Below are positions 943-26,977 of a DNA stretch of 64,000 bases, one piece after another (within the stretch, counting starts at the first letter, position 1; every line of letters begins with the position of its first letter). This DNA comes from Macrostomum lignano (lineage: Eukaryota): contig NIVC01001236.1 in NCBI GenBank assembly GCA_002269645.1, forward strand, positions 1 to 64,000. The letters run 5' to 3'. The notes below the pieces were generated by a model. That model had not been told where the DNA came from and searched no databases. It worked only from the letters and a program-made list of their open reading frames with translations. Position numbers and translations under genes: made by a program.

Positions 943-3651
943 CTATTTAGTCTTGGCCTCGTCCTCGGCCTCGGCCTGATCAATAGCGGCCAGCCGGTGC
1001 AGCACAGTGGGGTGCGAGTGATTGAAAGCGCTGTACAGCGGGTCAAACAGCGGTAGGACAGGTTGTCCGTGTGCAGTTTAATTAGCGCCGTCTTCAGCTG
1101 CTGGCCAAAGCCCAGCCTCACTGAGAATCGGTCGGCCTAAGTTTGAAAAAAGAATGAAATTTTATAAGCAATTATATGAATGGCTACTGCTAGTAGTAAA
1201 AGCTGAGGAGATGAAGAAGAGGTACAGTGGTGAGAGGGAGGAGAGAGACAGGGAGAAAAGGGAGGGGGAGAGGGAGAAGAGGGAGAGGGAGACTGGAGAG
1301 GGAGAAGAGGGAGGGGGAGAGGGAGAAGAGGGAGAGGGAGAAGAGGGAGAGGGAGACTGGAGAGGGAGAAGAGGGAGGGGGAGAGGGAGAAGAGGGAGAG
1401 GGAGAAGAGGGAGAGGGAGAAGAGGGAGAGGGAGGACTGGAGAGGGAGAAGAGGGAGGGGGAGAGGGAGAAGAGGGATAGGAGAAGAGGGAGAGGGAGAA
1501 GAGGGAGAGGGAGACTGGAGAGGGAGAAGAGGAGGGGGAGAGGGAGAAGAGGGAGAGGGAGAAGAGGGAGAGGGAGAAGAGGGAGAGGGAGACTAGAGAG
1601 GGAGAAGAGGGAGAGGGAGGAGAGGGAGGGGAGAGGGAGGAGAGGGAGAGGGAGAAGAGGGAGAGGGAGGAGAGGGAGAGGAGAGAGGGAGGATGGGGGA
1701 TAGAGAGCAAGAGGTTGAGCAGCGGCGAGCGCACCTGGAACTCGAACAGGCGGGTGAGGCAGATCATGGCGAAGCGAGCAGCTCATTGTATGGCGACAGC
1801 AGGAACTCCAGCACGAAGGCCAGCCGGAGCAGCAGCGGCGCCGGCTGCTGGAAGCCGAAGGCGGCGAACGCAGAGTGGCAGTTAAGGAGCTGGCCGAAGG
1901 CGAAGAACATGAGGAACAGGTTGACCTCGCTGATGAAAATGTTGGACACGTTGTGGCCAGAGACCAGTGGCCCAGCTCGTGACCCAGCACGGCCAGAATC
2001 TCATCATCGTTGCAGCCCTTCTTGGCCTCCTTTTCCTTTTCCTCGCCGGCTGCAGAATCCGGTTCCGCTTTCGCCTCGTCGCTTTCTCTCACCCTGGCCT
2101 TCGGCGGCCTTCTCCTTCTCCCGTTTTTCCCGCTCCTTCTCCTCCTTTCCTTCACGACTGCATCTGGTAGCCTTCGATTAGGGTGTCGAACAGCACAATG
2201 CGCTTGCTGCGCCACAGCCCGAATAAGTAGGCGTTGCTATGGGCGAGCGGCGCGAACCCTCGATCACCTGCGGGGAGGTGCCGGCGCATTCTGAGTGAAC
2301 TCCTCGCGGCTGACGGCCTCTCACCAGCCGGCGGCTCTCATTCACTCTCACCCACCCCACCCTACTCTTACCCAAACCTACTCTCACCACCCCAACCTAC
2401 TCTTACCCACCCCAACCTACTCTTACCCACCCAACCTACTCTTACCCACCCCAACCTACTCTTACCCACCCCAACCTACTCTTACCCACCCCAACCTACT
2501 CTTACCCTCCCCAACTACTCTTACCCACCCCAACCTACTCTTACCCTCCCCAACCTACTCTTACCCACCCCAACCTACTCTTACCCACCCAAGCCACTCT
2601 CACACTCCCCAAGCTACTCTCACCCACCCCAAGGCACTCTCACCACTCCAAGCCGCTGTCACCAACCCCAAGCCGCTGTCACCCATCACAAGCCACTGTC
2701 ACCCACCCCAAGCTACTCTCACCTACCTCAAGCCAATGTCATCCACCCAAGCCTCGCACCCGCCTGTCACCCACACCCGAGCTCTAACCCCACTCCATGC
2801 AATTGAGTGTTCTCAGTTAACCGCATTCGCCCAACCGTCTCACCAGCAGCTGGGTCAGCGGGAACTCCAGCCGCTTAGCCAGATCTTCAATGCGCTGCTT
2901 CAGCTGGCCTCGCGCAGCGGCTCGTACGTGTCAAACAGGGGCGCAATGAAGCTGGGTACACCAGCATGAGAACGAAAATCACAACGGAGGCCAGAAGCCA
3001 GGCGTACACGTAGAAGTACGGCCCGCCACGCTCGATCAGCCAGAGCAGGGCGGCGGCGATCGGCAGGCCGATGGCCATGCTCAGCAGCAGGCTCTTAAGC
3101 TGGTCCTTGGCGTAGAAACCCGGTGTCTGCTTGTTGAAGCCGTGCCTGGCCTCCAGCACGAAGTTCTTGTACACCGACCAGGGCAGGTCGATTAGGAAGG
3201 ACAGCAGCATGACGTACACCAGGAACACCATCGACTGCGGCAGCTGGCCGCGGCTGGCATCAGGCCCGGCCAGGCTGTCCAGATGGCGGCCGGCCACGGC
3301 CCACAGGCGGGGCATGAGCTCGGCTAGCAGGATGAAGGTGAACAGGAGCTGCGACCAGAGGCCGCGGACAGCACTGTACCGGCTCTTGTCGATGCTGTAG
3401 GCCCGGGCCTTGGCGTAGGTCTGGTCGTCCGTAAGCTGCCGGGCGGCCTCGGGCAGCTGAGGCGAGTCGCGCATGAGTTTGTACTGCCGCCAGGCCAGGT
3501 AGTTCTCCCACAGGTAGGTGAGCCAGAAGAAGCCAAGGACACCGCAGAAGATTCGCTCCGGGGCCACGGAGTTCAGCCAGCTGGAAAGGGCGCTCTGCTG
3601 GTCGGCGGCGACGGGGTCGGGCATGGCCGGCTGCGGGGACGGTTTATGCAT
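943..3651 (-). CDS. ZMPSTE24: CAAX prenyl protease 1 (Ste24/ZMPSTE24, peptidase M48); 3 exons, carries about 7 single-base frameshifts (assembly error or decaying copy)
   Basis: Exons complement(943..1136,1735..2267,2844..3651), GT-AG junctions (CTG|GTGAGA, CAG|GTGCGC). Recognisable motifs: N-terminal ...EARHGFNKQT, IAPLFD, VIEGSRRS.HSNAY, KRIVLFDTL, zinc motif EILAVLGHELGHW, FEFQ|AD, LYSAFNHSHP. Frame must be restored at about 2955, 2908, 2243, ~2157, 1957, ~1778 and ~1055; 1535 nt + 7 = 514 codons. Start is ATG 3651 or ATG 3624 (GCCATG). Confidence 0.93.
1225..1695. repeat. GA-rich polypurine tandem repeat in ZMPSTE24 intron 2
   Basis: (gagggagaagaggga)-type units; explains the low-complexity ORFs at 1154-1767. 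Confidence 0.9.
2350..2770. repeat. 20-bp minisatellite (tcttacccaccccaacctac) in ZMPSTE24 intron 1, degenerating rightwards
   Basis: Period 19-20 visible from 2360 to 2590. Confidence 0.9.
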
Positions 3652-4494
3652 AAGCTTGAGTGCCTACTCACGAGTAGTGCTGTGAGGTTCTCATGTCAGG
3701 TTGAGTTGCGCCTTTGAGCTTGTATTTGCTATCGTATTCCACCTGTTTGATCACGTGCTCTCTGTGCACTTTAACCTCTGACCTTTAGGAGTTACCGTAA
3801 ATTCGCAGCTCTTACATTGGTGGCAGCCCAGAACGCTCTGTCAGCGGCAGAGTTTAGTGGCACGGACTCAAGGCACAACTCAACCTCACACGCAAATCGC
3901 ACAATGCAATCATTTTGAGTGCCAATAAGACGAGAAGTGAATCACGGTTTTAGAATCAGGAATAAAGGACAAGAACTGCTGGTCTGCACATGCTCTTGGT
4001 CAAAACTGGGCAACTCGCTGGGAGTTACAAAGAAATGACGGTGTATTTAATATTCCGCTCAAGGTATAAAGACTCAAATAAGCTTGCTAATATCTCCCAG
4101 TCAGAAGCATTTTGCATCTAAATCTGAAAACAATTTCTAGAATTATGAATAGTGTCTATTAATACTTACTCTTTTACTGATCTGAAAGAGTTAATGAAAA
4201 TGAATACGAATGTACTTACAGAAATAATGACAACTCAGTGATTGATAGCTAAACAAATTTAAGGCACAAAAATTCTCTATTTCGCGAACATGAAGCTCTG
4301 AAATTCCGCAAATGAAAGATTATTCTAAGCAAGTCTGATTAGCACTTGCTGAATCGCAATATACGAGTACTAATGCTGCAGTTGCACTGTGGAATGAATA
4401 CATGTAGATCAGGTCTGATTCTTAAGGTCAAATAAAAAAGCGGGGTCAATCAAGGTTACGGCAGTTTTAATAGGATCACCAAATTTTACGCCAG

Positions 4495-4735
4495 TTTAAT
4501 CAGGGGTCAGCTAAGGTCAAACCAGTTAAAACAGGGTCAGCTAAGGTCAAGCCAGTTAAAACAGGGTCAGATAAGATCAAGCCAGTTAAAACAGGGGTCA
4601 GATAAGGTCAAGCCAGTTAAAACAAGGGTCAGCTAAGGTCAAGCCAGTTAAAACAGGGGTCAGCTAAGGTCAAGCCAGTTAAAACAGGGGTCAGCTAAGG
4701 TCAAGCCAGTTGATAAAGGGTCAGCTAAGGTCATC
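4495..4735. repeat. ~30-bp minisatellite (ggtcagctaaggtcaagccagttaaaacag) downstream of the AMDHD2 stop
   Basis: About 7-8 units of 30-31 bp. Confidence 0.88.
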
Positions 4736-4801
4736 ATGAAACTAGAAACCAGGGTGGCAACCGGGTCAGCCAAGGTCGCATCTGTTAACCTAGTCTGCTC
4801 A

Positions 4802-7039
<2,238 letters not shown>

Positions 7040-7057
7040 CTGGAACACTTCAGGTGG

Positions 7058-7990
7058 TAATTAGCATCTAGCTGCCACCTAATTAGCATCCAGCTGCCAC
7101 CTAAATAGCATCCAGCTGCGACCTAATTAGCATCTATCTGCCACCTAATTAGCATCCAGCTGCCACCTAATTAGCATCCAGCTGCCACCTAATTAGCATT
7201 CAGCTGCCACCTAATTAGCATCTACATGTATCTGCCACCTAATTAGCATTCAGCTGCCACCTAATTAGCATCCAGCTGCCACCTAATTAGCATTCAGCTG
7301 CCACCTAATTAGCATCTACATGTATCTGCCACCTAATTAGCATCCAGCTGCCACCTAATTAGCATTCAGCTGCCACCTAATTAGCATTCAGCTGCCACCT
7401 AATTAGCATCTACATGTATCTGCCACCTAATTAGCATCCAGCTGCCACCTAATTAGCATTCAGCTGCCACCTAATTAGCATCTACATGTATCTGCCACCT
7501 AATTAGCATCTAGCTGCCACCTAATTAGCATCCAGCTGCCACCTAATTAGCATCCAGCTGCCACCTAATAAGCATTCAGCTGCCACCTAATTAGCATCTA
7601 CATGTATCTGCCACCTAATTAGCATCTATCTGCCACCTAATTAGCATCTATCTGCCACCTAATTAGCATCTATCTGCCAGCTAATTAGCATCCAGCTGTC
7701 ACCTAATTAGCATCTATCTGCCACCTAAATAGCATCCAGCTGCGACCTAATTAGCATCTATCTGCCACCTAATTAGCATCCAGCTGTCACCTAATTAGCA
7801 TCTATCTGCCACCTAATTAGAATCCAGCTGTCACCTAATTAGCATCTATCTGCCAACCAATTAGCATCCAGCTGTCACCTAATTTAGCATCTATCTGCCA
7901 ACTAATTAGCATCTATCTGCCACCTAATTTAGCATCTATCTGCCAACTAATTAGCATCTATCTGCCAACTATTTAGCACCTAGCTGCAAT
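7058..7990. repeat. 22-bp minisatellite (gccacctaattagcatccagct) immediately upstream of the AMDHD2 first acceptor
   Basis: About 40 units, with variants catccagct/cattcagct/catctatct/catctacatgtatct. Confidence 0.95.
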
Positions 7991-8324
7991 CTAATTTGTT
8001 TCTAGCTGACTTATTTAGCTATTTTGATTGAAGCCAAAAACACCAAAAAGCAAAGTAAACAAAGTTGCATTTCAGATCATAAAATCCATTATTTATGTAT
8101 CAGATATATATGCATATAAAGTTACTCAAGTAGTCAACAACTATGGATTGTAAAAAGAAGATAGAACTACAATAGAAGATAAGTGTGTAAAAATTGAATT
8201 ATCACAGCCGTTTTTTATGCATCAGAGAGTCACTACAGTGAATATGGTAAGCATGCAATAAGGCGAATTGAGACTGATATTGCAGAAGCTTAGCAAAGAA
8301 AGTCGGGTACTGATCCGTTAAGAC

Positions 8325-8810
8325 CTAGGTGCTCATTCTTTGAGATCTGGGTGCTTATTCCTTGAGATCTGGGTGCTCATTCCTTGAGATCTGGGTGCTC
8401 ATCCTTTGAGATATGGGTGCCCATTCCTTGAGATCTGGGTGCTCATTCCTTGAGATCTGAGTGCTCATTCTTTGAGATCTGAGTGCTCATTCCTTGAGAT
8501 TTGGGTGCTCATCCTTTGAGATCTGAGTGCTCATTCTTTGAGATCTGGGTGCTCATCCTTTGAGATCTTGCTGCTCATCCTTGAGATCTGAGTGCTCATT
8601 CTTTGAGATCTGAGTGCTCATTCCTTGAGATCTGGGTGCTCATTCCTTGAGATTTGGGTGCTCATCCTTTGAGATCTGAGTGCTCATTCTTTGAGATCTG
8701 GGTGCTCATCCTTTGAGATCTTGGTGCTCATCCTTGAGATCTGGGTGCTCAATCTTTTGAGATCTCAGTGCTCATTCTTTGAGATCTGAGTGCTCATTCT
8801 TTGAGATCGC
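8325..8810. repeat. 22-bp minisatellite (tgagatctgggtgctcattcct) directly after the DDX39-like stop
   Basis: About 22 units. Confidence 0.95.
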
Positions 8811-8824
8811 GGTAAGCGGTCAGT

Positions 8825-11800
8825 CTATTCAGCATCCTGATATTCGTCATCAACCACAGCTTCATCAGCAGCCCGATTCGGCTCCACAGCAAAGAAAATC
8901 ACTCCAGTGCGTGGCTGGGCGTCTCCACCCGCAGCAGGCGGCAAATAGTCGCATACGTGAACTGTGGCGGGCAGGTGCGCTATTTGCATACAGAATCTGG
9001 ACTCCGCCTCATTCAACACATGCGCCTCCGAGTCCGGCTCCTGCAGCGTCAGGGCGAGTCCGCGGCTTCCGAAGTGTGCAGCACGGCCGATCTGTGAATA
9101 AAAAAGTTGAGAAAGCTATTGGTGTTTGTGAGCATCTGATTCTCAAAGCTCGTTTAAGGGCGAGTCTATAATTTTTTAAGGTCGATTCTAAGAATATGGT
9201 TAATGGTCGATTCTAGAAACAGTTTTAGAGCGATTCTAAAAATGCCTTGAATGAAGTGCTGAGAATTATTTAATGACGATTCTAAGATTTTTTTACGTGC
9301 GATCCTAAGAATTATCTAAAGGCGATTTAAAAACAATTTAAGGGCGATTCTAAGAAAGGGTTTTAAAGGCGATTCAAAGAAAGGGTTTGAGGGCGAGTCT
9401 AAGAAAGGGTTTAATGGTGATTCTAAGAAAGGGTTTGAGGGCGATTCTAGGAAAGGGTTTAATGACAATTCCAAGAAAGGGTTTGAGGGCAATTCTAAGA
9501 AAGGGTTTCAGGGAGATTCTAAGAAAGGGTTTGAGGGCGATTCTAGGAAAATGTTGGAGGGTGAGTCTAAGAAAGGGTTTAATGGTGATTCTAGGAAAGA
9601 GTTTGAGGGCGATTCTAAGAATGTTTTGAGGGCGATTCTAGGAAAGGGTTTAATGACAATTCCAAGAAAGGGTTTGAGGGCAATTCTAAGAAAGGGTTTC
9701 AGGGAGATTCTAAGAAAGGGTTTGAGGGCGATTCTAAAAAAGGTTTTACGGAGATTCTAAGAAGGTTTAAGGGAGATTCTAAGAAACAGTTTAAGAGCGA
9801 TTCTAAAAATGGTTTAAGAGCGATTCTAAGAATGATTCAAGGGCGAGTCTAAAGCTGGTTAAAGTGTGATTCTAAATATGCTTTGAATGAAGTGCTGGGA
9901 ATAATCTATTAATGGCTATTCTAAGAATGTGACAGACTAGCTGACTTTCAAAATTCTCTAACTGCTCACCCTGTACAGGTAGAGACCCGGGTCCGCAGGC
10001 AGACAGTAGTTAATAACTACGCCGACCCGTTGAAACTGCAGACCAAAGGCGTACAAATCCGTGCTGATTAGAATGCGCCGCTTGCAATTCCTGAACAGCC
10101 GGTAGTTCTCCATCCGGCTGGCCTGGCACAGGTCCCCGTGCGCCGCCAGCGCTGACAGGCCGCGAGATTTCAGGAATTTCTCCAGACTGTCGCACTGGCG
10201 CGGGGAATTGACAAATACGATTGCCTGCGGAGGTTTGCAGTGGCTCAATGAAATGAGTCACCACGATTAGAAGTAGGCAGAATGCCAACTCCCCAGATTA
10301 TCACTAAAGCCAGGTGCACCTGTTCAAACTCGAGTACTCGCAACAGCTTCAGCAGCCGAGCATTCTTAGCTCTGTAGCCGCAGTCTGCAATCGGCACGCG
10401 ATACTGCAGGAGGCTGTGCGGAGCCAGCTGAGCCTCATCGCTCAGGCACAGCTCATGCGGATTCTGCATCAGCTCCAGGCACTGCTGCCGCATCTGTGAG
10501 GTTTAGGAAATATAAGTATTACCTGCCTGTGTGGCTTACTGTGTGTTTGTGTCTGTCTCGGTGTCTGTCAGTCAGTCAGTCAGTCAGTCAGTCAGTCAGT
10601 CAGTCAGTCAGTCAGTCAGTCAGTCAGTCAGTCAGTCAGTCAGTCAGTCAGTCAGTCAGTCAGTCAGTCAGTCAGTCAGTCAGTCAGTCAGTCAGTCAGT
10701 CAGTCAGTCAGTCAGTCAGTCAGTCAGTCAGTCAGTCAGTCAGTCAGTCAGTCAGTCAGTCAGTCAGTCAGTCAGTCAGTCAGTCAGTCAGTCAGTCAGT
10801 CAGTCAGTCAGTCAGTCAGTCAGTCAGTCAGTCAGTCAGTCAGTCAGTCAGTCAGTCAGTCAGTCAGTCAGTCAGTCAGTCAGTCAGTCAGTCAGTCAGT
10901 CAGTCAGTCTGTCTGTCAGGCCCGGCACTCACAGCCGCACTGATGGTGGTGCAGCACATGAGAACCTGCCGATCGGGTGGTGCCAGCAGCAGCGCCTGCA
11001 CCGCCTCATCGCGCAGCAGCAGCTGGTCGCAGTCGTCCAGCATAACAATTCGCAGCTGGTCGGTGCGCAGGTGACCCCGGCGTGCCAAGTCCAGCAGGCG
11101 GCCAGGCGAGCCGACTGCGATGTCCGGCCGGGAGGCAGCAGCGGCAGCGTCTCGTCTTGATGAAAAAAGCGATGGGAGTGCATCGTCTCAATTGCATGTC
11201 TGAGATGCGTAAACCAAGCCTGCATACTTTGCATATCAAGTACCTTTCCGAGCCTTCAGGTACCTTTTGACACAGCAAAACACAGAGTTTCCCAGAATTG
11301 AGATGAGTTCCAAGCATCCAGCTGAGTTCCCAAGCATTGAGATGAGTTCCAAGCATCCAGCTGAGTTCCCAAGCAATGAGATGAGTTCGAAGCATTGAGA
11401 TGAGTTCCAAGCATCCAGCTGAGTTCCCAAGCATTGAGATGAGTTCCAAGCATCCAGCTGAGTTCCCAAGCATTGAGATGAGTTCGAAGCATTGAGATGA
11501 GTTCCAAGCATCCAGCTAAGTTCCCAAGCATTGAGATGAGTTCCAAGCATTGAGATGAGTTCCAAGCATCCAGCTAAGTTCCCAAGCATTGAGATGAGTT
11601 CCAAGCATCCAGCTAAGTTCCCAAGCATTGAGATGAGTTCCCAAGCATTGAGATGAGTTCCAAGCATTGAGATGAGTTCCAAGCATCCAGCTAAGTTCCC
11701 AAGCATTGAGATGAGTTCCAAGCATCCAGCTGAGTTCCCAAGCATTGAGATGAGTTCGAAGCATTGAGATGAGTTCCAAGCATCCAGCTAAGTTCCAAGC

Positions 11801-13975
11801 ATCCAGCTAAGTTCCCAAGCATTGAGATGAGTTCCAAGCATCCAGCTAAGTTCCCAAGCATTGAGATGAGTTTCCAAGCTTTGAAATGAGTTTCTCAAGC
11901 ATCCAGCTGAGTTTCCAAGCATTAAGATGAGTTTCTCAAGCATCCAGCTGAGTTTCCAAGCATTAAGATGAGTTTCTCAAGCATCCAGCTGAGTTTCCAA
12001 GCATTAAGATGAGTTTCTCAAGCATCCAGCTGAGTTTCCAAGCATTGAGATGAGTTTCCAAGCATTAAGATGAGTTTCCAAGCATTGAGATGAGTTTCCA
12101 AGCATTAAAATGAGTTTCCAAGCATTAAGATGAGTTTCCAAGCATTGAGATGAGTTTTCAAGCATTAAGATGAGTTTCCAAGCATTAAGATGAGTTCCCA
12201 AGCATTGAGATGAGTTTCCAAGCATCCAGCTGAGTTTCCAAGCATCCAGTTGAGTTTCGAAGCATCGGATGAGTTTCCAAGCATCCAGTTGAGTTCCCAA
12301 GCATTGAGATGAGTTTCTCAAGCATCCAGCTGAGTTTCCAAGCATTAAAATGGTTTTCCAAGCATTGAGATGAGTTTCCAAGCATTAAAATGAGTTTCCA
12401 AGCATTAAGATGAGTTTCCAAGCATTGAGATGAGTTTCCAAGCATTGAGTTGAGTTTCCAAGCATTGAGATGAGTTTCTCAAGCATCCAGCTGAGTTTCC
12501 AAGCATTGGGATAAGTTTCCAAGCATTAAAATGAGTTCCCAAGCATTGAGATGAGTTCCAAGCATCCAGCTGAGTTCCCAAGCATTGAGATGAGTTCCAA
12601 GCATTGAGATGAGTTCCAAGCATCCAGCTGAGTTCCCAAGCATTGAGATGAGTTCCAAGCATCCAGCTGAGTTCCCAAGCATTGAGATGAGTTCCAAGCA
12701 TTGAGATGAATTCCAAGCATTGAGATGAGTTTCCAAGCATTGAGATGAGTTTCTCAAGCATCCAGCTGAGTTTCCAAGCATTGAGATGAGTTTCTCAAGC
12801 ATCCAGCTGAGTTTCCAAGCATTGGGATAAGTTTCCAAGCATTAAAATGAGTTCCCAAGCATTGAGATGAGTTCCAAGCATCCAGCTGAGTTCCCAAGCA
12901 TTGAGATGAGTTCCAAGCATCCAGCTGAGTTCCCAAGCATTGAGATGAGTTCCAAGCATTGAGATGAGTTCCAAGCATTGAGATGAGTTCCAAGCATTGA
13001 GATGAGTTTCCAAGCATTGAGATGAGTTTCTCAAGCATCCAGCTGAGTTTCCAAGCATTGAGATAAGTTTCCAAGCATTAAGATGAGTTTCCAAGCATTG
13101 AGATGAGTTTCCAAGCATCCAGTTGAGTTCCCAAGCATTAAGATGAGTTTCCAAGCATTAAGATGAGTTTCCAAGCATTAAGATGAGTTTCCAAGCATTA
13201 AGATGAGTTTCCAAGCATTAAGATGAGTTCCCAAGCATTGAGATGAGTTTCCAAGCATCCAGCTGAGTTTCCAAGCATCCAGTTGAGTTTCGAAGCATCG
13301 GATGAGTTTCCAAGCATCCAGTTGAGTTCCCAAGCATCATGATGAGTTTCCAAGCATCCAGCTGAGTTTCCAAGCATTGAGATGAGTTTCCAAGCATTCA
13401 GCAGAGTTTTAAGGCATCCAGTCGAGTTTTGCAGCATCGCGGTACACTTTTAAGCATTCAGCTATCTTATACAGCCTTCTAAAGCGCCAATAAACAATCT
13501 GAAGACATCCGTAGCATCTCACTCAAGAAGCCCAAATAACTCAATCAGCCAGCTACCTGCCCGGAGCGCCACCGAGGAATTCGGCAACTCGCGGCCGACG
13601 TCCCGGACAGCGAGAGGAGAGGCAGCGCAGCTGTCGGACAGTCTGCACAGCCAGCTCCCGACTGTGACAGAGCACCAGAGCGCGAGTGGCGACAGAATTC
13701 CCCTCCAAATCAGCGGAGGCTGGGCTGAGCCTTTTGGCTTCATCAATCAGCGTCAGCAATCGCTGGGTGACGGCCACAGCGCAGGCGGTTGACTTGCCGC
13801 TGCCGGACGGCGCCTGGCATAGCAGATCGGCGCCAGACAGCGCCAGAGAGATGCAGCGCGCCTGAATAGCGCCGGGGCGCGCATAGCCGAGCTCGTCGCG
13901 TATGGCCCTGAGCAGACGCGCCGAGCTGAGCAGGTCGGCGAACTCTGTCGGGCTGCCGCCGCAGGTCTCAGTTGC
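8825..13975 (-). CDS. DDX39B-like: Divergent DDX39/UAP56-family DExD-box helicase paralog; 5 exons, no own ATG, catalytic motifs degenerate
   Basis: Exons complement(8825..9091,9970..10224,10320..10493,10933..11155,13557..13975) = 1338 nt, 446 codons, no frameshift. Colinear with UAP56: Q motif RPGAIQ, motif I APSGSGKS, Ia LCHSRELA, FLGG, GSPGRLL, II LDDCDQLL, LMQNP..L...QL..HSLLQY, FEQ|AIVFVNS, RRILIST, YLYR|IGRAAHFG. The 5' boundary (AAG|GCA at 13975) is less certain than the internal junctions. Confidence 0.88.
9170..9900. repeat. ~24-bp minisatellite (gggcgattctaagaaagggtttga) in DDX39-like intron 4
   Basis: Recurring gattctaagaa core with degenerate flanks. Confidence 0.9.
10567..10908. 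repeat. Near-perfect (TCAG)n microsatellite in DDX39-like intron 2
   Basis: About 85 units. Confidence 0.98.
11285..13440. repeat. 19-21-bp two-variant minisatellite (caagcattgagatgagttc / caagcatccagctgagttcc) filling DDX39-like intron 1
   Basis: About 2.1 kb of interspersed unit variants; explains the MLGNS.. ORFs. Confidence 0.95.
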
Positions 13976-15303
13976 CTTGGCAGGCAGCCAATGAAATTTA
14001 TGGATATTTCATTTATACTTTCATTTCAACAGCAGAAATATCCTATGGCAATGAGACAGAAGCTAAAACACTTTCAGCCTAAAAGATTCATCCTCTGGTC
14101 CTTTCAAACTTCACAATAGCAATCTGGCCTGCTCAATGTTTGTCTCTTCTCAGCTCTTCTCTCTAATCTCTTCTATTTTCTCTCTTTACTCTCCACTCCT
14201 TTGCCTTCCCTCCTCTCTCCTATTTCATCCCTCTTTTCCTTCATTCCCTCTGTCTCCGCCCTCCTTTGGCCCGTGCATGCGTATAACTTTCCCACAGGTA
14301 GCCAAGAGAGGACAAATCAGTAGTCACAGAAGAGCTTGGAAGAGTTGACAGAAGAGTTGAGCAAACAACGAAGTTCTTTGTCGAGAAAAAAAGCTTTTAT
14401 TTGATTAACTTTAACTTCCATTTCCGAGCGACATACAGTCCAGCTGTAGTTATAATGATTGAAGATAAGAGCGAAGTTTGACACGAATGCGAGACAGAAA
14501 TGGTGTTGAAGGGTCAATATTGGATGACAAGACTAACACAAATTGTCAAATTCATAACTAAATGGAAACAAACGCAAGAGAGTATCAGGTACACATGTTC
14601 GAATTAAAAAAGCAATATGTTATCAAAACAGACAGCGAACCGGATATTGCGAACAAAGGAAATGCTGGACCAAAGAACTGGCTGGATTTTCATCATTTTC
14701 TATCGAATTTCCTATCATAATAATAAACAGCTTGAAATTAGCGAATAACGTTCTATGTATAAAGTTTCGAATCATTAAGCCAAGCCCATAGCAACAGTTA
14801 ATACTCATGAATAACAATAGAAAATTTCCGTTGCTAAGGGGTTGCTAAGCAGCTAGTAGATTATGATTGCATGCAGAGAGAATCGAACCAAACTTGATGA
14901 ATTGTTGAGACCACTAACATGGAACAGTTGCTGGGAATTTGCAGTAAAAGTACACATAGTGTACTTCAGAAACGTAAGTGGAACCAACTTTCTCAGATAG
15001 CAGGATTATTGACATTATTTGTGGTTCTATTAATAGCATCAATGACCTGCCACAACCTTAAACCTCCTTAGCTTAACTCAACCAGGCAGCAGTGGGGGGG
15101 GGGCAAGAGACCCCCAGGAGAGCTAAACGACTAAATCGATTGCGTCATCAGGGTTAAGGAATCAAGCATCACAATATTACTTAAAAATCGCCGGCACACA
15201 GGCTTTTAACGAGTTTATACCCTTCTTTACAATTCTAACCTATTTCTCATACGTTTTTAGCGGGTTAGTATATCCTATAGTGCATATATTTGAGCAGTCC
15301 GGC

Positions 15304-18300
15304 TCAGGCCTCCCTCAGCCCGTCAATCTTGGCCAGCAGCTCCTTGGCGTCGGCCTCGGTCTTCAGCCGGACCAGGAACGGCACAATGCGCCGGTCGTCA
15401 TTGGCCGACTTCGGCATTGGCGGATTCGGCGGACAAGCCAAACTGAGATTGTTCTTAGCAACCGACAGCTTCATGTCCTTAGTAACCAGAGTGTTGAGCA
15501 TGATGGTGCCCAGGGTGTTGTCCGCCCGCACGATCAACTGCGCCCGGCTGCCGCCCTCCGCCTCCGCCGGCTTGACGTGCACGCAGCCGACGCCCTTCTC
15601 CTTCCACTGTTTGGCCTCGCCGGCGGCCATATAGAACAGCTTGCACTTCTGGCTGAACACGGCGCCGTCCTCGCGAATCTCCCGCGTCTCCGGCTTCGGC
15701 GGCTCGTATTCTTCGTCTTCCTGCTCCTCCTGGGAGCTCGAGGCAGCCGCGGCGGAGGCGGCGGCGAAACCGCCAGGCCCGAACAGGGACAGGCCACCAG
15801 GTGGCTGTTGCGGCAGCGCCGCCCCCGGCCCTGAGTTGAATTTGAATCCTGTGAACCCACTCGACGCTGTCGTCAAGCCAGTCGTTGACGTTGCCGACGT
15901 CGCCGTCGTTGTCGTTGTTGAAGTCGACGAAGCCGTCGTTGACTTGGCTGACGCGCCAAAAAAGAATGTTGCCGTTGTGGCCGCACCGTCAGTCGCCGGC
16001 TTCTGCGGCTGCTGCGAGTTGAAGCTAAACGTGGCAGGCATCGCAGGCGCCATCGTGGTGGCCGTGGTGGCAGCAGTCGTCGGTGCCGATGCCGCGGTGG
16101 ACGTAGTCGCGGCGGAGAAGTTGAACTTTGCCGGACTTGTCGACGCCTTCAAAGGCGCTGCCAGCGTTGTTGAAGTCGTCGTCGGAGTCGCCGCCGCAGC
16201 GGCCGCCGTTCCAGTCGACGAATTTGCAGTTGCCGACGACTCCACGTACGGGTGCCGGCGCTCGATGTCGGCCAGGTGGCGCTCGTAGTCGCGGAACACG
16301 GGCGTGAGAACGCAGTAGGGGCTGTCAGCCACGTGACTCTGAATCCAGCGCAGCACGGACTGGTTCAGCGCCTTCAGCTGGGCCAGGTGGGCGGCATTCG
16401 GATCGGCGGCGGGCGTTGCCGATTTCGCCGTTGTTGTCGTCGACGAGGCCGCCAGCGAATCGGTGGTGGTGGCGGCGGTGGCGTTGGCCGAGAAGTTGAA
16501 AGCCAAAGAGGGGGCTGTCGTGGCCGACGCGGCCTGGGCACCGAAGCCGGTGAAGCCAGTGAACGACTTGAAGAGCCCGCCAGTGCCTTTGCCCTGCCGG
16601 GTCAGAGAAGAGTTTTGCTGTATAACTGTGAGCATGGTTTGTCCGCAACATGGGCCGTTCAGACTCACCATATTAACTGCATATTCCCTGGGCATTTGAA
16701 TTTCAAGCTGTTTCTCGCTCTCATGGGCTTAAAACTAATATCCAACTATTCCAATCCCAGCCTTCACAGCCCCGATCTTTACAATCCTAATCTTCACAGT
16801 CCCAATCTTCACAGTCCCCAAGCTTCACAGTCCCCAATCTTCACAGTCCCCAATCTTCACAGTCCCCAAGCTTCACAATCCCAGCCTTCACAGTCCCGAT
16901 CTTCACAATCCCCAATCTTCACAGTCCCGATCTTCACAGTCCCAATCTTCACAATCCCCAAGCTTCACAGTCCCTAATCTTCACAATCCTGATCTTCACA
17001 ATCCCCAATCTTCACAGTCCCGATCTTCACAGTCCCAATCTTCACAATCCCCAAGCTTCACAGTCCCCAATCTTCACAATCCCGATCTTCACAATCCCCA
17101 ATCTTCACAGTCCCGATCTTCACAGTCCCAATCTTCACAATCCTGATCTTCACTATCCCCAATCTTCACAGTCCCGATCTTCACAGTCCCAATCTTCACA
17201 ATCCCGATCTTCACAATCCCCAATCTTCACAGTCCCGATCTTCACAGTCCCAATCTTCACAATCCCCAAGCTTCACAGTCCCCAATCTTCACAATCCCCA
17301 AGCTTCACAGTCCCCAATCTTCACAATCCCCAAGCTTCACATTCCCCAATCTTCACAATCCCCAATCTTCACAATCCCCAATCTTCACAATCCCGAACTT
17401 TCACAATTCCCAACCTTCACAATCCCCAACCTTCACAATCCCGAACTTTCACAATCCCCAACCTTCATAATTCTTAACCTTTACAATACCCAAACTTCAC
17501 AATTCCTTACCATAAATAATGTAGAAAAGAACAGACAAAATAATTGAGTCAAACAGCTCTCACCTCACTATCGTGAGCTCGCCGCTTAGCAACTCGAATT
17601 TCGCGACCCTTCAGCACATCCTGCGACGCGGTCTTGAAACGGCCAGCCTAGGTTAGTGAGAATTAGTTGGAAACAGTTGGAATATGTTTTCTTAGATAGA
17701 CACAAGAATTGTAAATCTCATTAATAATGATAATTATCATATTCGCATATTCGCAGGAGCTTGAGGGAGAGTGGAGGGTGGTTGGAGAGAGGCAGAGAGG
17801 GAGAGTGGAGAGAGGCGGGGAGGGAGAGAGGGAGAGTGGAGAGGCAGGGAGGGAGTGGATAGGGGCAGAGAAGGAGAGAGGCAGAGGGAGTGAAAAGGGG
17901 CAGAGAGGGAGAGGGAGTGGATAGGGGCAGAAAGGCAGAGGGAGTGGATAGGGGCAGAGAGGGAGAGTGGAGAGAGGCAGAGGGAGTGGATAGGGGCAGA
18001 GAGGGAGAGTGGAGAGAGGCAGAGGGAGTGGATAGGGGCAGAGAGGGAGAGGGAGTGGATAGGGGCAGAGAGGGAGAGTGGAGAGAGGCAGAGGGAGTTG
18101 ATAGGGGCAGAGAGGGAGAGGGAGTGGTTAGGGGCAGAGAGGGAGAGTGGAGAGAGGCAGAGGCAGAGTGGATAGGGGCAGAGAGGGAGAGTGGAGAGAG
18201 GCAGAGGCAGAGTGGATAGGGGCAGAGAGGGAGAGTGGAGAGAGGGTTAGGCCCTCATGGGTGGCAACCCCGGCCAATCTCCGCGCACAAGCCCCAATGA

Positions 18301-18461
18301 ATTCGGTCGCGCATGGAATCAAACCAAGGGTGGTGGCGCGAGAATCAAATGCGTTCACCGCTGAGCAGATCTGTCCCAATTAGCCAACTCACATCTTCCT
18401 TCTCGTCCTCCTGATCCCAGTTTTCGTGATTCAATTCCGATGTTGGGTTTCTCTTGGACAT
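15304..18461 (-). CDS. NUP50: Nucleoporin Nup50 (N-terminal NUP50 domain, FxF/Thr-Ala-rich middle, C-terminal Ran-binding domain); 3 exons, 480 aa
   Basis: Exons complement(15304..16593,17564..17647,18393..18461) = 1443 nt. Exon 1 MSKRNPTSELNHENWDQEDEKED and exon 2 AGRFKTASQDVLKGREIRVAKRR match the Nup50 importin-alpha-binding N-terminus. Also LKALNQSVLRWI...LTPVFRDYERHL, and RanBD FSQKCKLFY...WKEKGVG...QLIVRADNTLGTIMLN. All junctions GT-AG, phase 0. Confidence 0.95.
16755..17510. repeat. 16-17-bp minisatellite (aatcttcacagtcccc) in NUP50 intron 2
   Basis: About 45 units with degenerate ends. Confidence 0.93.
17760..18245. repeat. GA-rich tandem repeat (ggatagggGcagagagggagagtggagagaggcagagggagt-type) in NUP50 intron 1
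   Basis: Polypurine units of about 24-42 bp. Confidence 0.88.
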
Positions 18462-19003
18462 TGCGCGGGCAAGAGTGTACCAAGTCCAGGTGATGAGAGC
18501 ATGAAAGAGTCGAGAGATCAGGTCGAAATTGCAACTTCTTAGACCTCATCACTTAATGAGCCATAAATCAGCAATAGAATGACATAGAGAAGCTATTCAA
18601 CATTCAACAGTAGCATTGGATATTGCTCTTAAAGTTGATTTCTAATTAGAGCAATTTCAATGTGGCAGTAAAAAGTTATATGTAAATGATTATTATCCCA
18701 ACAAATGGCCCTTGTATCATACCAGCTACCATTGGCCATGTACTAGAATGATAACAAAATAAATATTTAAATGGTTCTTTTATCATTAAAATATCCCAGT
18801 CTGATCAATGCTTCTTAGATGATAAATACATGTATTTTTATCCATTATTCCAACTTTTAAACTAAGCATCTAAGGTAAGCTTGATTTTTTAATATACTTG
18901 TTCTTTCCATGCTAGTACATAGGTATTTAATATTTATTACCTTAGAAATAAAATAATTGTTATATTGACTTTCAATTAAAAAGCTTGAAACTTTTTATTC
19001 ATA

Positions 19004-21214: not shown

Positions 21215-21436
21215 ATGTACATGTAAGGCTGTTTAGTCCAAGGACTGGGGGGGTCACCACACACCCTCAATTTATACCCTAGCTAATGCTGGTACCCATT
21301 TTACAGCTGGGTGAACTGAAGTAATAGAGTTAAGTGGTCTTGCTCAAGGACACAAATTGTTCCAGTGGGATCGGGAAATCGAACCCCCGACCTTCCAGTC
21401 GTGAGGCCGACGCTCTAACCACTAGGCTACAACCCC
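21215..21436 (-). mobile_element. tRNA-derived SINE (copy 1) with a CORE-like central domain
   Basis: Minus strand: ggttgTAGCCTAGTGGttagagcgtcggcctcacgactggaaggtcggGGTTCGATTTCCcgatcc (A and B boxes), then gtgtccttgagcaagaccacttaac...cagttcacccagctgtaaaatgggtacc. A second copy lies at ~59.0 kb. Confidence 0.8.
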
Positions 21437-25048: not shown

Positions 25049-26977
25049 TCAGTGTCGCTTCGGCTGAGCAAAGAGCACTCCGTGGTACATGAGTCCATTG
25101 ATCTCCATGGAGATCACTACGGAGGAGTCTGGCAGGCCCAGATGACCGCCTGAAAGCAAAATAAAAAAGTCAGGCATATAAATTTTGATTAAAATTTTCC
25201 AAATGAAAATCTGGAAACAAACAATAAAAAATTTTGAACACAACTTTTTTGAAGCAGCGAAAGCCACGCCACGCTAAGCCAAGCTAAACCTCTGATCTCA
25301 AAGTCACAAAGTCCACCTCAGTCCACCATCGGACTGACCTTTTTCTTGAGAACTCCACACTGTAACGTGACAAATGAAACTCAACGAGCGTAACAGTCAG
25401 ACACGCACTGAGCAGCTCAGTAGTAACAGGTACTCACCGTGGTGACCCGCGATTCGAATCCCACCGCCAGCGGAGGGCAGCGGCAGGCCCGGAAATGGCG
25501 GAAGTCCGGCCGGAAACGGGAACTGAACGCCACCGCCACCGCTAGCGCCGCCGCCACCACCACCACCACCGCCACCGCCGCTGTTTCCAACGCCAGCTGT
25601 AATCGGCGGAGGCGGACTGCGAGTGTCGCCGGCGGAGCTGCTGCCACTGCCGTTGGCAGTTGGTCGCTTCGGGGGCGGAGGCTGATGATCAGCCACGCCT
25701 CCGGGAACGAAGGACGCCACTCCGGCTGTGTCGCTTCCGCTGGATGACCGCTTCAGCGAGCCGCCACCGCCAGCGCCGTTTCCTGAATCTCCATTGAAAC
25801 CCTTGTTAGCTGCGGCAGCGACGGCCGCGGAGCTGAGATCTTTGGGAGATGCGTCGGACAGGTTCTGGGGATGGAGAGCGTGGTGATGATGAGGATGCGG
25901 CTGGTGATGCTGGTGATGCCGCTCGTCTCCAGGAGTGGCGCGAAGCACCGGCGGAGTGAGGCAGGCGAAGTCGCGGTCTGAAAGAGGGTGAATTCAGAAT
26001 TTATCAATGGTTAACCTTCAGAAATAAAATATGGTAAAATGATGAAAACTTGCTAACTACTCTACTCCCTAGTAGTAGGCCAAGAGAATTATTCTTAGCC
26101 TCACCTGACATGGCCTTGCCGGTGAGCATTGAACTGTGATAGGTGAGCAGCGGCGGCAGGCCGCCTGGGTTCGGGCTGCACTCGAAGGCGGGGTAGTTCG
26201 GCCGCCTGCCCTCCCGCCTGTTGCCGTCGATGGCCGCTTGAAGCTCGCCCGGGCTGCTCAGCTTCAGCTTCTCGCACTCGTACGGGTACAGGTATTTCAT
26301 GTACCTGCGAGGAGATGGGCAACAGATGAGCTGGTTACGAATTTTCAACTGTTAGTGCCGTATCACCGTGCTACATTAAGATAGCATCATCAAGCTACTC
26401 TCAAGATAGCATCATCAAGCTACTCTCAAGATAGCATCATCAAGCTACTCTCAAGATAGCATCATCAAGCTACTCTCAAGATAGCATCATCAAGCTACTC
26501 TCAAGATAGCATCATCAAGCTACTCTCAAGATAGCATCATCAAGCTACTCTCAAGATAGCATCATCAAGCTACTCTCAAGATAGCATCATCAAGCTACTC
26601 TCAAGATAGCATCATCAAGCTACTCTCAAGATAGCATCATCACGCTACTCTCAAGATAGCATCATCAAGCTACTCTCAAGATAGCATCATCAAGCTACTC
26701 TCAAGATAGCATCATCAAGCTACTCTCAAGATAGCATCATCAAGCTACTCTCAAGATAGCATCACAGCAACAAGAAAGCACTGATCAACTCACTGAGTCC
26801 TCAGTGTGAAAGCGGCGCTGGTGATGGATGACGGCAGGTTGAGACCCTTGGTGATCTCTCGCCAGAGCTTCTTGTTAATGACTTCAACGAGGCCACCTTT
26901 GCTCACTACGAGACGGAAGAGCTCGTAAAGATCCAGGACCTGCTTAGCCATGATGGGGATTCTGTTCACCGGCGTGC
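25049..26977 (-). CDS. ARID3: ARID3/dead ringer (retained) transcription factor, exons 3-6 (ARID core, REKLES region, C-terminus)
   Basis: Exons complement(25049..25149,25438..25977,26105..26304,26794..26977): GTPVNRIPIMAKQVLDLYELFRLVVSKGGLVEVINKKLWREITKGLNLPSSITSAAFTLRTQ|YMKYLYPYECEK...ELQAAIDGNRREGRR, then the REKLES-beta-like SMEINGLMYHGVLFAQ. The full six-exon CDS is 1917 nt (638 aa). Confidence 0.96.
26378..26764. repeat. Near-perfect 25-bp minisatellite (aagatagcatcatcaagctactctc) in ARID3 intron 3
   Basis: About 15.5 copies, one substitution seen. Confidence 0.97.

What the first reader, a model, noticed from the sequence alone, without database searches (positions are those of the whole stretch)
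943..18461. Operon-like co-oriented cluster NUP50 > DDX39-like > AMDHD2 > ZMPSTE24 whose inner genes may take their start codon from a spliced leader
Seen: four unrelated housekeeping-type genes lie head-to-tail on the minus strand, 1.1-1.8 kb apart. NUP50 at the head has its own ATG. DDX39-like and AMDHD2 do not: an in-frame stop lies just upstream of each first exon (TGA ~14005; TAA ~7060), and the first in-frame Met falls deep inside the conserved domain. Each first exon begins at a phase-0 acceptor followed by GCA (gccaAG|GCA ACT GAG at 13975; tgttccAG|GCA GCC GAG at 7039). Established: flatworm spliced leaders end in AUG, that AUG can act as the initiator, and SL trans-splicing resolves polycistronic transcripts. 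Inference: SL addition gives M-ATETCGG.. and M-AAEAGQ.., both with G at +4, so these genes would depend on trans-splicing to be translated at all.
Basis: partly seen in the sequence, partly recalled or inferred. Interest (0 to 1): 0.78.

Follow-up and report, generated by a model that had tools for sequence, protein, structure and literature searches.

The report
Flatworm genes started by spliced leader
This is a stretch of the flatworm Macrostomum lignano genome in which two ordinary housekeeping genes have no start codon of their own and almost certainly borrow the AUG at the end of the trans-spliced leader RNA, a mechanism already documented in flatworms.

Summary
Four conserved genes (NUP50, a divergent DDX39/UAP56-like helicase, AMDHD2, ZMPSTE24) lie head-to-tail on the minus strand, 1.2-1.8 kb apart. 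The first coding exons of DDX39-like (13975) and AMDHD2 (7039) begin at phase-0 acceptors. Each has an in-frame stop just upstream and no in-frame ATG until codon 178 or 155.

The window is Macrostomum lignano or a near-identical copy. Its published 35-nt spliced leader ends in ATG, about 30% of its genes are trans-spliced and about 15% lie in operons.

For DDX39-like, the public Mlig_3_7 gene model of a 92-98% identical copy is a 5'-partial CDS that starts exactly at the same AAG| acceptor. This is strong indirect support. For AMDHD2 I found no transcript record. The case rests on a consensus trans-splice acceptor (TTCCAG), correct phase, absence of any ATG, and homologues whose Met lies 0-6 residues upstream.

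The spacers meet the published operational operon criterion (repeat-adjusted distance under 1 kb), but polycistronic transcription is not shown. NUP50 and ZMPSTE24 are themselves reported as trans-spliced, so NUP50 as a promoter-bearing head is uncertain.

The mechanism is known (Cheng et al. 2006; Macrostomum papers). This is an ordinary new example, of low novelty.

The parts
15304..18461 (-). NUP50-like gene, CDS exons 18461-18393, 17647-17564 and 16593-15304 (stop TGA 15306-15304). It has its own ATG at 18461.
   Evidence: Translation is intact at 478 aa. Pfam NUP50 2.7e-18 and Ran_BP1 4.9e-11. M. lignano NUP50 is flagged TRANSSPLICED in PMC5816591 supplement 2.
18500..18503 (-). CATG in the window where the Mlig_3_7 copy has the acceptor GCAG, 38 nt upstream of the NUP50 ATG. 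The window copy therefore lacks this AG.
   Evidence: Alignment A2. The public 5'-partial NUP50 CDS in L001 starts 2 nt after TTGCAG.
14396..14401 (-). AATAAA, the likely NUP50 poly(A) signal, about 400 nt upstream of the DDX39-like acceptor.
   Evidence: It is conserved in L001, and similarity between the two copies collapses immediately after it. It is consistent with the published NUP50 transcript length of 2446 nt.
14009..14011 (-). In-frame TGA upstream of DDX39-like exon 1.
13976..13981 (-). Putative trans-splice acceptor GCCAAG| of DDX39-like (AG at 13977-13976).
   Evidence: It is identical in L001, where the public 5'-partial CDS starts at the next base.
8825..13975 (-). DDX39/UAP56-like DEAD-box gene. 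Exons 13975-13557, 11155-10933, 10493-10320, 10224-9970 and 9091-8825 (stop TAG 8827-8825). There is no ATG before codon 178.
   Evidence: The spliced ORF is open, 445 aa plus the SL Met. Pfam DEAD and Helicase_C. Best PDB match is DDX39B. The exon 1/2 and 2/3 junctions are confirmed by P0121.
8321..8808 (-). 22-bp minisatellite directly after the DDX39-like stop codon.
   Evidence: TRF.
7058..7996 (-). 22-bp minisatellite (about 41 copies) that ends 17 nt upstream of the AMDHD2 acceptor. It inflates the spacer.
   Evidence: TRF. The repeat-adjusted stop-to-acceptor distance is 358 nt.
7061..7063 (-). In-frame TAA upstream of AMDHD2 exon 1.
7040..7045 (-). Putative trans-splice acceptor TTCCAG| of AMDHD2. 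It matches the published M. lignano trans-splice motif [T/C]TNCAG.
   Evidence: The motif is from PMC8629364. None of the 8 cis acceptors in the cluster matches it.
4802..7039 (-). AMDHD2 (N-acetylglucosamine-6-phosphate deacetylase) gene. Exons 7039-6842, 6489-6143 and 5467-4802 (stop TAA 4804-4802). There is a 1-bp frame break in exon 3 near 5110.
   Evidence: It is 47-50% identical to metazoan AMDHD2 over 97-100% of its length. Pfam Amidohydro_1.
943..3624 (-). ZMPSTE24 (CAAX prenyl protease) gene with its own ATG at 3624 and another in-frame ATG at 3651. There are several exons, at least 6 single-base frame breaks in homopolymer runs, and the CDS with its stop codon ends at 943.
   Evidence: Pfam Peptidase_M48_N 1e-58 and Peptidase_M48 2e-38. 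The M. lignano ZMPSTE24 transcript is flagged TRANSSPLICED, 5UTR_CDS_3UTR (PMC5173321 supplement 5).

Best explanation
The window is a Macrostomum lignano locus, either a homeologous or allelic copy or another assembly of the region at the end of Mlig_3_7 contig NIVC01001234.1.

The DDX39-like and AMDHD2 pre-mRNAs each carry a 3' splice acceptor at the start of their first coding exon and have no cis donor or ATG upstream. The spliceosome joins the 35-nt spliced leader (...UUAUUGCAUG) to these acceptors. Because both acceptors are phase 0, the leader's terminal AUG becomes the initiator codon, giving M-ATETCGG... and M-AAEAGQ.... Without trans-splicing neither ORF has a usable start, since the first internal Met lies 155-178 codons in, inside the catalytic domains.

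What is shown:
- the gene structures;
- the absence of an ATG;
- the phase of both acceptors;
- the species and its SL sequence;
- a public transcript-based model starting exactly at the DDX39-like acceptor.

What is inferred:
- trans-splicing at the AMDHD2 acceptor;
- translation from the SL AUG for both genes;
- co-transcription of the genes.

The cluster fits the published operational definition of an M. lignano operon: same strand, downstream gene trans-spliced, repeat-adjusted spacer under 1 kb. I rate actual polycistronic transcription at roughly even odds.
For: - Species: P0121 (BOX15_Mlig026976g1, M. lignano) is 99% identical to DDX39-like exon 1. L001 from GCA_002269645.1 aligns at 92-98% to window 20903-9337.
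- SL: it ends in ATG, 30% of genes are trans-spliced, 15% are in operons, the trans-splice motif is [T/C]TNCAG and the operon threshold is 1 kb after repeat subtraction (PMC8629364).
- Annotation method: gene 5' ends in Mlig_3_7 were set from SL-read peaks by the TBONE pipeline (PMC5730564).
- DDX39-like: P0121 is a 5'-partial protein beginning ATEACGG..., and its CDS starts at L001:10001, the base after ...ctgcctgccaag. Because an in-frame TGA lies 33 nt upstream, a 5'-partial ORF can start there only if the transcript model starts within 0-2 nt of the acceptor.
- Conservation: the 60 nt upstream of the acceptor are identical between the two copies.
- AMDHD2: the acceptor TTCCAG matches the trans-splice motif, while 0 of 8 cis acceptors in the cluster do. 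There is no ATG between the minisatellite and exon 1, and no GTRAG donor in any upstream ATG-ORF. In 120 metazoan homologues the Met sits mostly 0-6 residues upstream of exon-1 residue 1, so only a Met is missing.
- Precedent: Cheng et al. 2006 (cited in PMC9851317) showed that the flatworm SL AUG acts as initiator and that more than 40 schistosome cDNAs require it. PMC10468722 states that the Macrostomum SL likely contains the final ATG as the translation start codon.
- Spacers: NUP50 AATAAA (14401) to the DDX39-like acceptor is about 400 nt. DDX39-like stop to the AMDHD2 acceptor is 358 nt after removing tandem repeats. AMDHD2 stop to the ZMPSTE24 ATG is 933 nt.
Against:
- No M. lignano AMDHD2 protein or transcript record could be found.
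- The DDX39-like acceptor is AAG and does not match the [T/C]TNCAG motif. However, exon 2 of the same gene also uses AAG, confirmed by P0121.
- Weak in-frame cis alternatives exist for AMDHD2: ATG 8254 with phase-0 donors GTAGTG or GTGACT.
- The donors actually used in this cluster are themselves variable (GTAGCT, GTGCAC, GTGGGT, GTATGC), so donor weakness is not decisive.
- The assembly contains single-base homopolymer errors, so reading-frame arguments carry some risk.
- Operon part: locus-tag prefixes suggest that NUP50 and DDX39-like were not assembled into one transcriptional unit. About 270 nt upstream of the DDX39-like acceptor are 93-100% conserved between copies, which could be a promoter.
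Confidence: 0.7

Rival explanations
1. The genes are conventional. An unrecognised small 5' exon carrying an ATG is cis-spliced to the acceptors at 13975 and/or 7039, and each gene has its own promoter.
For: Phase-0, stop-free ATG...|GT combinations exist in both spacers, 34 upstream of DDX39-like and 8 upstream of AMDHD2. For AMDHD2 the ATG at 8254 with donors GTAGTG or GTGACT would give M-LTIFT(V)-AAEAGQ.... The donors really used in the cluster are not all consensus. Parasitic flatworms often share acceptors between cis- and trans-splicing (PMC12582326).
Against: None of the candidates has a GTRAG donor, and that many weak candidates are expected by chance. For DDX39-like, the transcript-based public model starts at the acceptor with no upstream exon. 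For AMDHD2, 940 of the 1190 nt between ATG 8254 and the acceptor are minisatellite.
Confidence: 0.15
2. Both inner genes are trans-spliced and use the SL AUG, but the cluster is not an operon. Each gene has its own promoter and a short outron, and co-orientation is coincidental.
For: About 60% of trans-spliced M. lignano genes are not in operons (PMC8629364). Four co-oriented genes arise by chance 1 time in 8. The NUP50 3' end is well defined by AATAAA and a break in conservation, and is followed by about 270 nt of 93-100% conserved sequence up to the DDX39-like acceptor. The locus tag Mlig026976.g1 differs from the NUP50 ids.
Against: All three spacers fall under the 1 kb repeat-adjusted threshold that separates the operon mode in M. 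lignano (PMC8629364). The authors note that assembled transcriptional units often split in repeat-rich operon spacers. The AMDHD2 spacer has only about 320 nt of unique sequence to hold a 3' end, a promoter and an outron.
Confidence: 0.4
3. The missing ATGs reflect decay or assembly error. These would be pseudogene copies of a polyploid genome, or the start codons were lost to sequencing errors.
For: There are single-base frame breaks in AMDHD2 exon 3 and at least 6 in ZMPSTE24. DDX39-like has degenerate helicase motifs: GKS, DDCD, CTT and YRIGRAAHFG. M. lignano is a hidden polyploid with many duplicates (PMC8629364).
Against: All frame breaks are 1-nt deletions in homopolymer runs, and the Mlig_3_7 copy has different ones in NUP50 and DDX39-like, which is the signature of long-read consensus errors. 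There are no premature stops from substitutions. The sequence around the DDX39-like acceptor is identical in two independent contigs. Homopolymer length changes cannot create or destroy an ATG in the 20 nt upstream of either exon.
Confidence: 0.05

Closest known systems
[quoted passage not shown]
   Same: The SL ends in AUG and the acceptor is in phase with the ORF. The recipient mRNA has no AUG of its own before the conserved domain, so translation depends on trans-splicing.
   Different: The species and the SL sequence differ (Macrostomum, 35 nt). Here the evidence is genomic plus one public gene model, not cDNA or translation assays.
Macrostomum lignano SL trans-splicing and operons (Wudarski et al. 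2017; Ustyantsev & Berezikov 2021; Wiberg et al. [quoted passage not shown]
   Same: It is the same organism and the same SL. One acceptor matches the [T/C]TNCAG motif. The genes are conserved housekeeping genes. The intergenic spacers are inflated by tandem repeats and fall under 1 kb after repeat subtraction.
   Different: A four-gene cluster is at the rarer end, since 75% of operons have two genes and 18% have three. The specific dependence of these two genes on the SL AUG is not described in those papers.
C. elegans SL2-type operons
   Same: The genes are co-oriented and unrelated in function, with a poly(A) site followed by an intercistronic spacer and a trans-splice acceptor.
   Different: M. 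lignano has a single SL and no specialised SL2. The nematode SLs do not end in AUG. The raw spacers here are ten times longer because of minisatellites.

Membership tests
Gene whose initiator AUG is supplied by the flatworm SL | The source species has an SL that ends in AUG. | tested here: met
   The species was identified as M. lignano. The SL ...TTATTGCATG is given in PMC8629364. The terminal ATG is noted as a start codon in PMC10468722.
Gene whose initiator AUG is supplied by the flatworm SL | A 3' acceptor opens the first coding exon in phase 0, and no in-frame AUG lies between the upstream stop and the conserved domain. | tested here: met
   The stops are at 14011-14009 and 7063-7061. The first in-frame ATG is at codon 178 and codon 155.
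Gene whose initiator AUG is supplied by the flatworm SL | There is an SL-mRNA junction at that acceptor, seen in a cDNA or in SL reads. | tested here: inconclusive
   For DDX39-like the support is indirect: the public transcript-derived 5'-partial CDS starts at the acceptor, and the annotation pipeline cuts at SL-read peaks. For AMDHD2 no record was found.
Gene whose initiator AUG is supplied by the flatworm SL | Translation actually starts at the SL AUG. | not testable with these tools
   This needs Ribo-seq, N-terminal proteomics or reporter assays.
M. lignano operon (operational definition of Ustyantsev & Berezikov 2021) | The genes are adjacent on the same strand, with no opposite-strand gene between them. 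| tested here: met
   No coding-like ORF lies on the plus strand between 943 and 18461.
M. lignano operon (operational definition of Ustyantsev & Berezikov 2021) | The downstream gene of each pair is SL trans-spliced. | tested here: inconclusive
   For DDX39-like the evidence is indirect but positive. ZMPSTE24 is flagged TRANSSPLICED in the M. lignano transcriptome. For AMDHD2 it is inferred only.
M. lignano operon (operational definition of Ustyantsev & Berezikov 2021) | The repeat-adjusted intergenic distance is under 1 kb. | tested here: met
   The three distances are about 400 nt, at most 358 nt and at most 933 nt.
M. lignano operon (operational definition of Ustyantsev & Berezikov 2021) | There is a polycistronic precursor transcribed from one promoter. 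| not testable with these tools
   No RNA data were available. The locus-tag prefixes of NUP50 and DDX39-like differ.
DDX39/UAP56 (DECD-box) helicases | The closest sequence relatives are DDX39A/B and Sub2, across both RecA domains. | tested here: met
   PDB phmmer gives DDX39B 253 bits and Sub2 213 bits, against about 160 bits for eIF4A.
DDX39/UAP56 (DECD-box) helicases | The catalytic motifs are canonical (GKT, DECD, SAT, HRxxRxGR) and the acidic N-terminal extension is present. | tested here: not met
   The motifs are GKS, DDCD, CTT and YRIGRAAHFG, and only about 11 residues precede the Q-motif Phe. A canonical M. lignano DDX39B exists elsewhere (Mlig030213.g1). This gene is therefore a divergent paralogue, not the orthologue.
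AMDHD2 / NagA N-acetylglucosamine-6-phosphate deacetylase | Full-length similarity to metazoan AMDHD2 with the amidohydrolase fold domain. | tested here: met
   It is 47-50% identical over 97-100% of the query. Pfam Amidohydro_1.

The most novel reading that the evidence does not exclude
The two NUP50 copies may differ in how an upstream AUG is delivered. In the Mlig_3_7 copy a TTGCAG| acceptor 38 nt before the NUP50 ATG would receive the SL AUG. In the window copy the same four bases read CATG, so an ATG is hard-coded at exactly the SL junction and opens the same 23-codon overlapping uORF. If this is real and not an assembly artefact, it would suggest either selection to keep that uAUG or the writing of SL-derived bases into the genome by conversion from a trans-spliced cDNA.
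Probability: 0.06. Interest if true: 0.55.

Novelty: new member of a known kind. Interest (0 to 1): 0.2.

Why it matters
The practical value lies mainly in annotation. Gene finders and ORF callers mark such genes as 5'-partial, as happened to the public DDX39-like model, or they pick a wrong internal Met. Adding the SL Met completes them.

Biologically, the finding gives two concrete conserved genes whose translation should be strictly dependent on trans-splicing, in a flatworm where transgenesis is available. A reporter lacking its own ATG behind either acceptor would be a clean in vivo readout of SL trans-splicing. It does not open a new question, because the mechanism, the SL and the genome-wide prevalence of trans-splicing and operons in this species are already published.

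Tried and rejected
- Same-species transcripts. I looked for transcript-derived proteins that would show the real N-termini. Three word-index searches and one exhaustive HMMER search with AMDHD2 exon 1 returned only one M. lignano protein, P0121. No Macrostomum AMDHD2 or ZMPSTE24 was found. The best exon-1 hit was 58% identical and from an unrelated source.
- SL RNA gene in the window. There was no match to the 35-mer with up to 3 mismatches and no Rfam SL family hit. Local alignment found nothing above the shuffle range, apart from a weak resemblance (score 24 against a null maximum of 21) of the 20-bp minisatellite in DDX39-like intron 1 to the SL. I do not consider that meaningful.
I rejected it because the acceptor AG is GG in the Mlig_3_7 copy, and the public protein includes ATEACGGNPTE upstream of it.
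- Pseudogene reading. I rejected it because all frame breaks are single-base deletions in homopolymers and they differ between the two assemblies.
- Supplementary tables of PMC5816591, PMC5173321 and PMC8629364. I searched them for AMDHD2 and Mlig026976 and found nothing. The stored files are truncated.
- Marginal Rfam tRNA hit at 21366-21436 (29.5 bits against a threshold of 29). ARAGORN did not confirm it.


Full report
**What is in the sequence**

Window 943-18461 (minus strand) carries four intron-containing metazoan genes. Their exons are GC-rich (about 60-70% GC), and almost every intron and spacer is filled with mini- or microsatellites. I built the gene models by hand from open frames and GT/AG boundaries.

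- NUP50: exons 18461-18393, 17647-17564 and 16593-15304.
- DDX39-like helicase: exons 13975-13557, 11155-10933, 10493-10320, 10224-9970 and 9091-8825.
- AMDHD2: exons 7039-6842, 6489-6143 and 5467-4802.
- ZMPSTE24: ATG at 3624, CDS with its stop codon ending at 943.

Pfam confirms all four identities. The helicase is closest to DDX39B/UAP56 among solved structures (253 bits against about 160 for eIF4A). AMDHD2 is 47-50% identical over its full length to animal N-acetylglucosamine-6-phosphate deacetylases. The CDS-to-CDS gaps are 1328, 1785 and 1177 nt.

NUP50 starts with its own ATG at 18461.

DDX39-like exon 1 begins after ...ctgcctgccAAG| at 13975, with an in-frame TGA at 14011-14009. There is no in-frame ATG until codon 178, at window 11043, inside the DDCD motif.

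AMDHD2 exon 1 begins after ...gtgTTCCAG| at 7039, with an in-frame TAA at 7063-7061. There is no in-frame ATG until codon 155, at window 6225.

Both acceptors are phase 0 and both exons start with GCA.

**Which organism**

A chimeric single-exon protein query returned one near-identical protein. It is P0121, 'hypothetical protein BOX15_Mlig026976g1, partial [Macrostomum lignano]', 99% identical to DDX39-like exon 1. Its contig (NIVC01001234.1 of assembly GCA_002269645.1, fetched as L001) aligns at 92-98% identity to window 20903-9337. The window is therefore M. lignano, either a homeologous or allelic copy or a different assembly of that region.

The published M. lignano SL is CGGTCTCTTACTGCGAAGACTCAATTTATTGCATG, which ends in ATG. 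About 30% of genes are trans-spliced and about 15% lie in operons. The enriched trans-splice acceptor motif is [T/C]TNCAG. Operons were defined by a repeat-adjusted intergenic distance under 1 kb, with a mode near 100 bp (PMC8629364).

**Evidence for the DDX39-like start**

P0121 begins 'ATEACGGNPTEF...'. Its CDS starts at L001:10001, the base immediately after ...ctgcctgccaag.

The coordinates returned by the look-up are CDS extents. I checked this on the neighbouring NUP50 model: its 197 residues are reproduced only if translation starts at L001:5280, 36 nt upstream of the ATG. It is therefore a 5'-partial ORF running from the first full codon of the transcript.

The same logic applies to P0121. 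Because an in-frame TGA lies 33 nt upstream, a 5'-partial ORF can begin at 'ATE' only if the transcript model begins within 0-2 nt of the acceptor. The Mlig_3_7 annotation set the 5' ends of trans-spliced genes from peaks of SL-containing reads, using the TBONE pipeline (PMC5730564). A model starting exactly at an AG| is what that procedure yields at a trans-splice site.

The 60 nt upstream of the acceptor are identical in the two copies. The acceptor is AAG rather than the TTNCAG motif, but exon 2 of the same gene also uses an AAG acceptor, which P0121 confirms.

In the other copy this reads cgacGG, and the public protein retains the residues upstream of it. I reject that model.

**Evidence for the AMDHD2 start**

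I found no M. lignano AMDHD2 protein or transcript record. The protein libraries gave none, and neither did the stored, truncated supplementary tables. The case is therefore inferential.

- The acceptor TTCCAG matches the published trans-splice motif. None of the eight cis acceptors in this cluster does.
- The acceptor is phase 0, so SL-AUG plus GCA GCC GAG gives [14 protein letters not shown]....
- In 120 metazoan homologues the initiator Met lies mostly 0-6 residues upstream of the residue aligned with exon-1 residue 1. For example, Papilio has MKAKSGLTRFHNC. Nothing but a Met is missing.
- The 1785-nt upstream spacer is 80% minisatellite (8321-8808 and 7058-7996). Its ATGs are all followed by early stops, and no GTRAG donor lies in any upstream ATG-ORF.

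Weak in-frame alternatives do exist: ATG 8254 with phase-0 donors GTAGTG or GTGACT. Several donors genuinely used in this cluster are non-consensus, so I cannot exclude a small cis exon. I give that about 15-20% for AMDHD2.

**Operon or not**

NUP50 has a conserved AATAAA at 14401. The two copies are 93-100% identical up to it, unalignable for about 150 nt after it, and then 93-100% identical again for the roughly 270 nt up to the DDX39-like acceptor. This places the NUP50 poly(A) site about 400 nt upstream of the acceptor. It also agrees with the published NUP50 transcript length of 2446 nt.

After removing tandem repeats, the distance from the DDX39-like stop to the AMDHD2 acceptor is 358 nt, and from the AMDHD2 stop to the ZMPSTE24 ATG it is 933 nt. 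All three pairs therefore satisfy the published operational criterion. Repeat-inflated operon spacers are exactly what Ustyantsev & Berezikov describe.

Several points count against taking the operon as shown.

- That criterion is only a proxy.
- About 60% of trans-spliced genes in this species are not in operons.
- The DDX39-like locus tag (Mlig026976.g1) has a different prefix from the NUP50 gene ids (Mlig032846 and Mlig008447).
- The conserved block upstream of the DDX39-like acceptor could be a promoter.

In addition, NUP50 is flagged TRANSSPLICED in M. lignano (PMC5816591 supplement). Its Mlig_3_7 model starts 2 nt after a TTGCAG, consistent with trans-splicing 38 nt upstream of the ATG. 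ZMPSTE24 is flagged TRANSSPLICED with a 5' UTR (PMC5173321 supplement). 'NUP50 at the head with the single promoter' is thus an assumption. I put true polycistronic transcription at roughly even odds.

**Comparison with what is known**

Use of the flatworm SL's terminal AUG as initiator was demonstrated in Schistosoma by Cheng et al. 2006, who found it in frame with 28% of trans-spliced transcripts and required by more than 40 cDNAs (summarised in PMC9851317). [quoted passage not shown] Trans-splicing sites and operons have been annotated genome-wide in this species.

The finding is therefore a correct reading of a known mechanism at a new pair of genes. It is neither a new kind nor a new variant.

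The helicase is not the DDX39B orthologue, because a canonical trans-spliced DDX39B exists elsewhere (Mlig030213.g1). It is a divergent paralogue with altered motifs (GKS, DDCD, CTT, YRIGRAAHFG) and no acidic N-terminal extension.

**Data-quality caveat**

The window has single-base deletions in homopolymer runs that break the frames of AMDHD2 exon 3 (near 5110) and of ZMPSTE24 at six or more places. The Mlig_3_7 copy has different ones in NUP50 and DDX39-like. This is the pattern of long-read consensus error, not of pseudogenes. It does not affect the absence of an ATG near either acceptor.

**Verdict**

The SL-AUG interpretation is well supported for DDX39-like and probable for AMDHD2. The operon status is plausible but unproven. 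The mechanism is already known, so interest is low. Its main use is for correcting annotation and as a convenient trans-splicing reporter.

Noticed in passing
window 18503-18500 (minus strand) vs L001 5274-5277: Over 240 nt the two NUP50 5' regions are 98% identical. They differ by a 3-nt block exactly at the likely trans-splice acceptor of the Mlig_3_7 copy: TTTGCAG|CTCTC there, TTTCATG CTCTC in the window. The window copy loses the AG and gains a genomic ATG at the position where the SL AUG would sit. That ATG opens the same out-of-frame 23-codon uORF overlapping the NUP50 start. No other AG lies between about 18531 and the ATG.
   Followed up: partly
window 8261-8252 (minus strand): TTATTGCATG, the last 10 nt of the M. 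lignano SL, occurs once in the window. It lies in the unique part of the DDX39-like to AMDHD2 spacer, on the gene strand. The expected count is 0.07, and 6 of 100 shuffles had at least one match. Its ATG is the weak in-frame cis-exon candidate for AMDHD2. It is probably chance.
   Followed up: partly
window ~5110 (AMDHD2 exon 3); ~2953, ~2908, ~2243, ~1957, ~1775, ~1048 (ZMPSTE24): There are single-base deletions in G/C or A homopolymer runs that shift the reading frame. The homologous Mlig_3_7 contig has different ones in NUP50 and DDX39-like. This looks like long-read assembly error rather than gene decay.
   Followed up: partly
window 14401-14250 vs L001 9470-9640: There is a sharp loss of similarity between the two copies directly after the NUP50 AATAAA. 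It is flanked by 93-100% identical sequence on both sides. The proximal NUP50 3' UTR (15290-14820) is also much more diverged (47-90%) than the distal part.
   Followed up: yes
window 11285-13409, 10563-10919, 5493-6124, 16762-17503, 9153-9852, 6543-6778: Nearly every intron of the four genes is occupied by a different tandem array. Examples are a 20-bp unit with about 107 copies in DDX39-like intron 1, (GTCA)89, (AGAC)163, and 16-, 24- and 20-bp units. The 20-bp unit has a weak, probably fortuitous resemblance to the 3' half of the SL.
   Followed up: partly
window ~31300-49800: There is a large higher-order tandem array of kilobase-scale units built from a 30-bp and a 128-bp sub-repeat, with strong G-over-C and A-over-T skew. 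A 14-bp satellite runs from 61492 to the window end, and a 48-bp array lies at 28903-30712.
   Followed up: no
window 25400-27224 (minus strand): There is an ARID/BRIGHT-domain gene (Pfam ARID 1.8e-12 in the ORF at 26793-27224), co-oriented with the cluster and upstream of NUP50. It is separated from NUP50 by an AT-rich region (18.5-22 kb, 37% GC). L001 carries a 2.9-kb insertion relative to the window near 19450.
   Followed up: partly
window 21366-21436 (minus strand): A tRNA hit in Rfam sits right at the gathering threshold (29.5 against 29 bits) and is not called by ARAGORN. It is probably a tRNA-derived repeat or noise.
   Followed up: yes
window 3633-3625 (minus strand): ZMPSTE24 has an acceptor-like ccccgCAG|CCGGCC directly before its ATG at 3624, and it is phase 0. 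If the reported trans-splicing of ZMPSTE24 occurs here, the SL AUG would add M-P-A in frame ahead of MPDPV.... The actual site is unknown.
   Followed up: no
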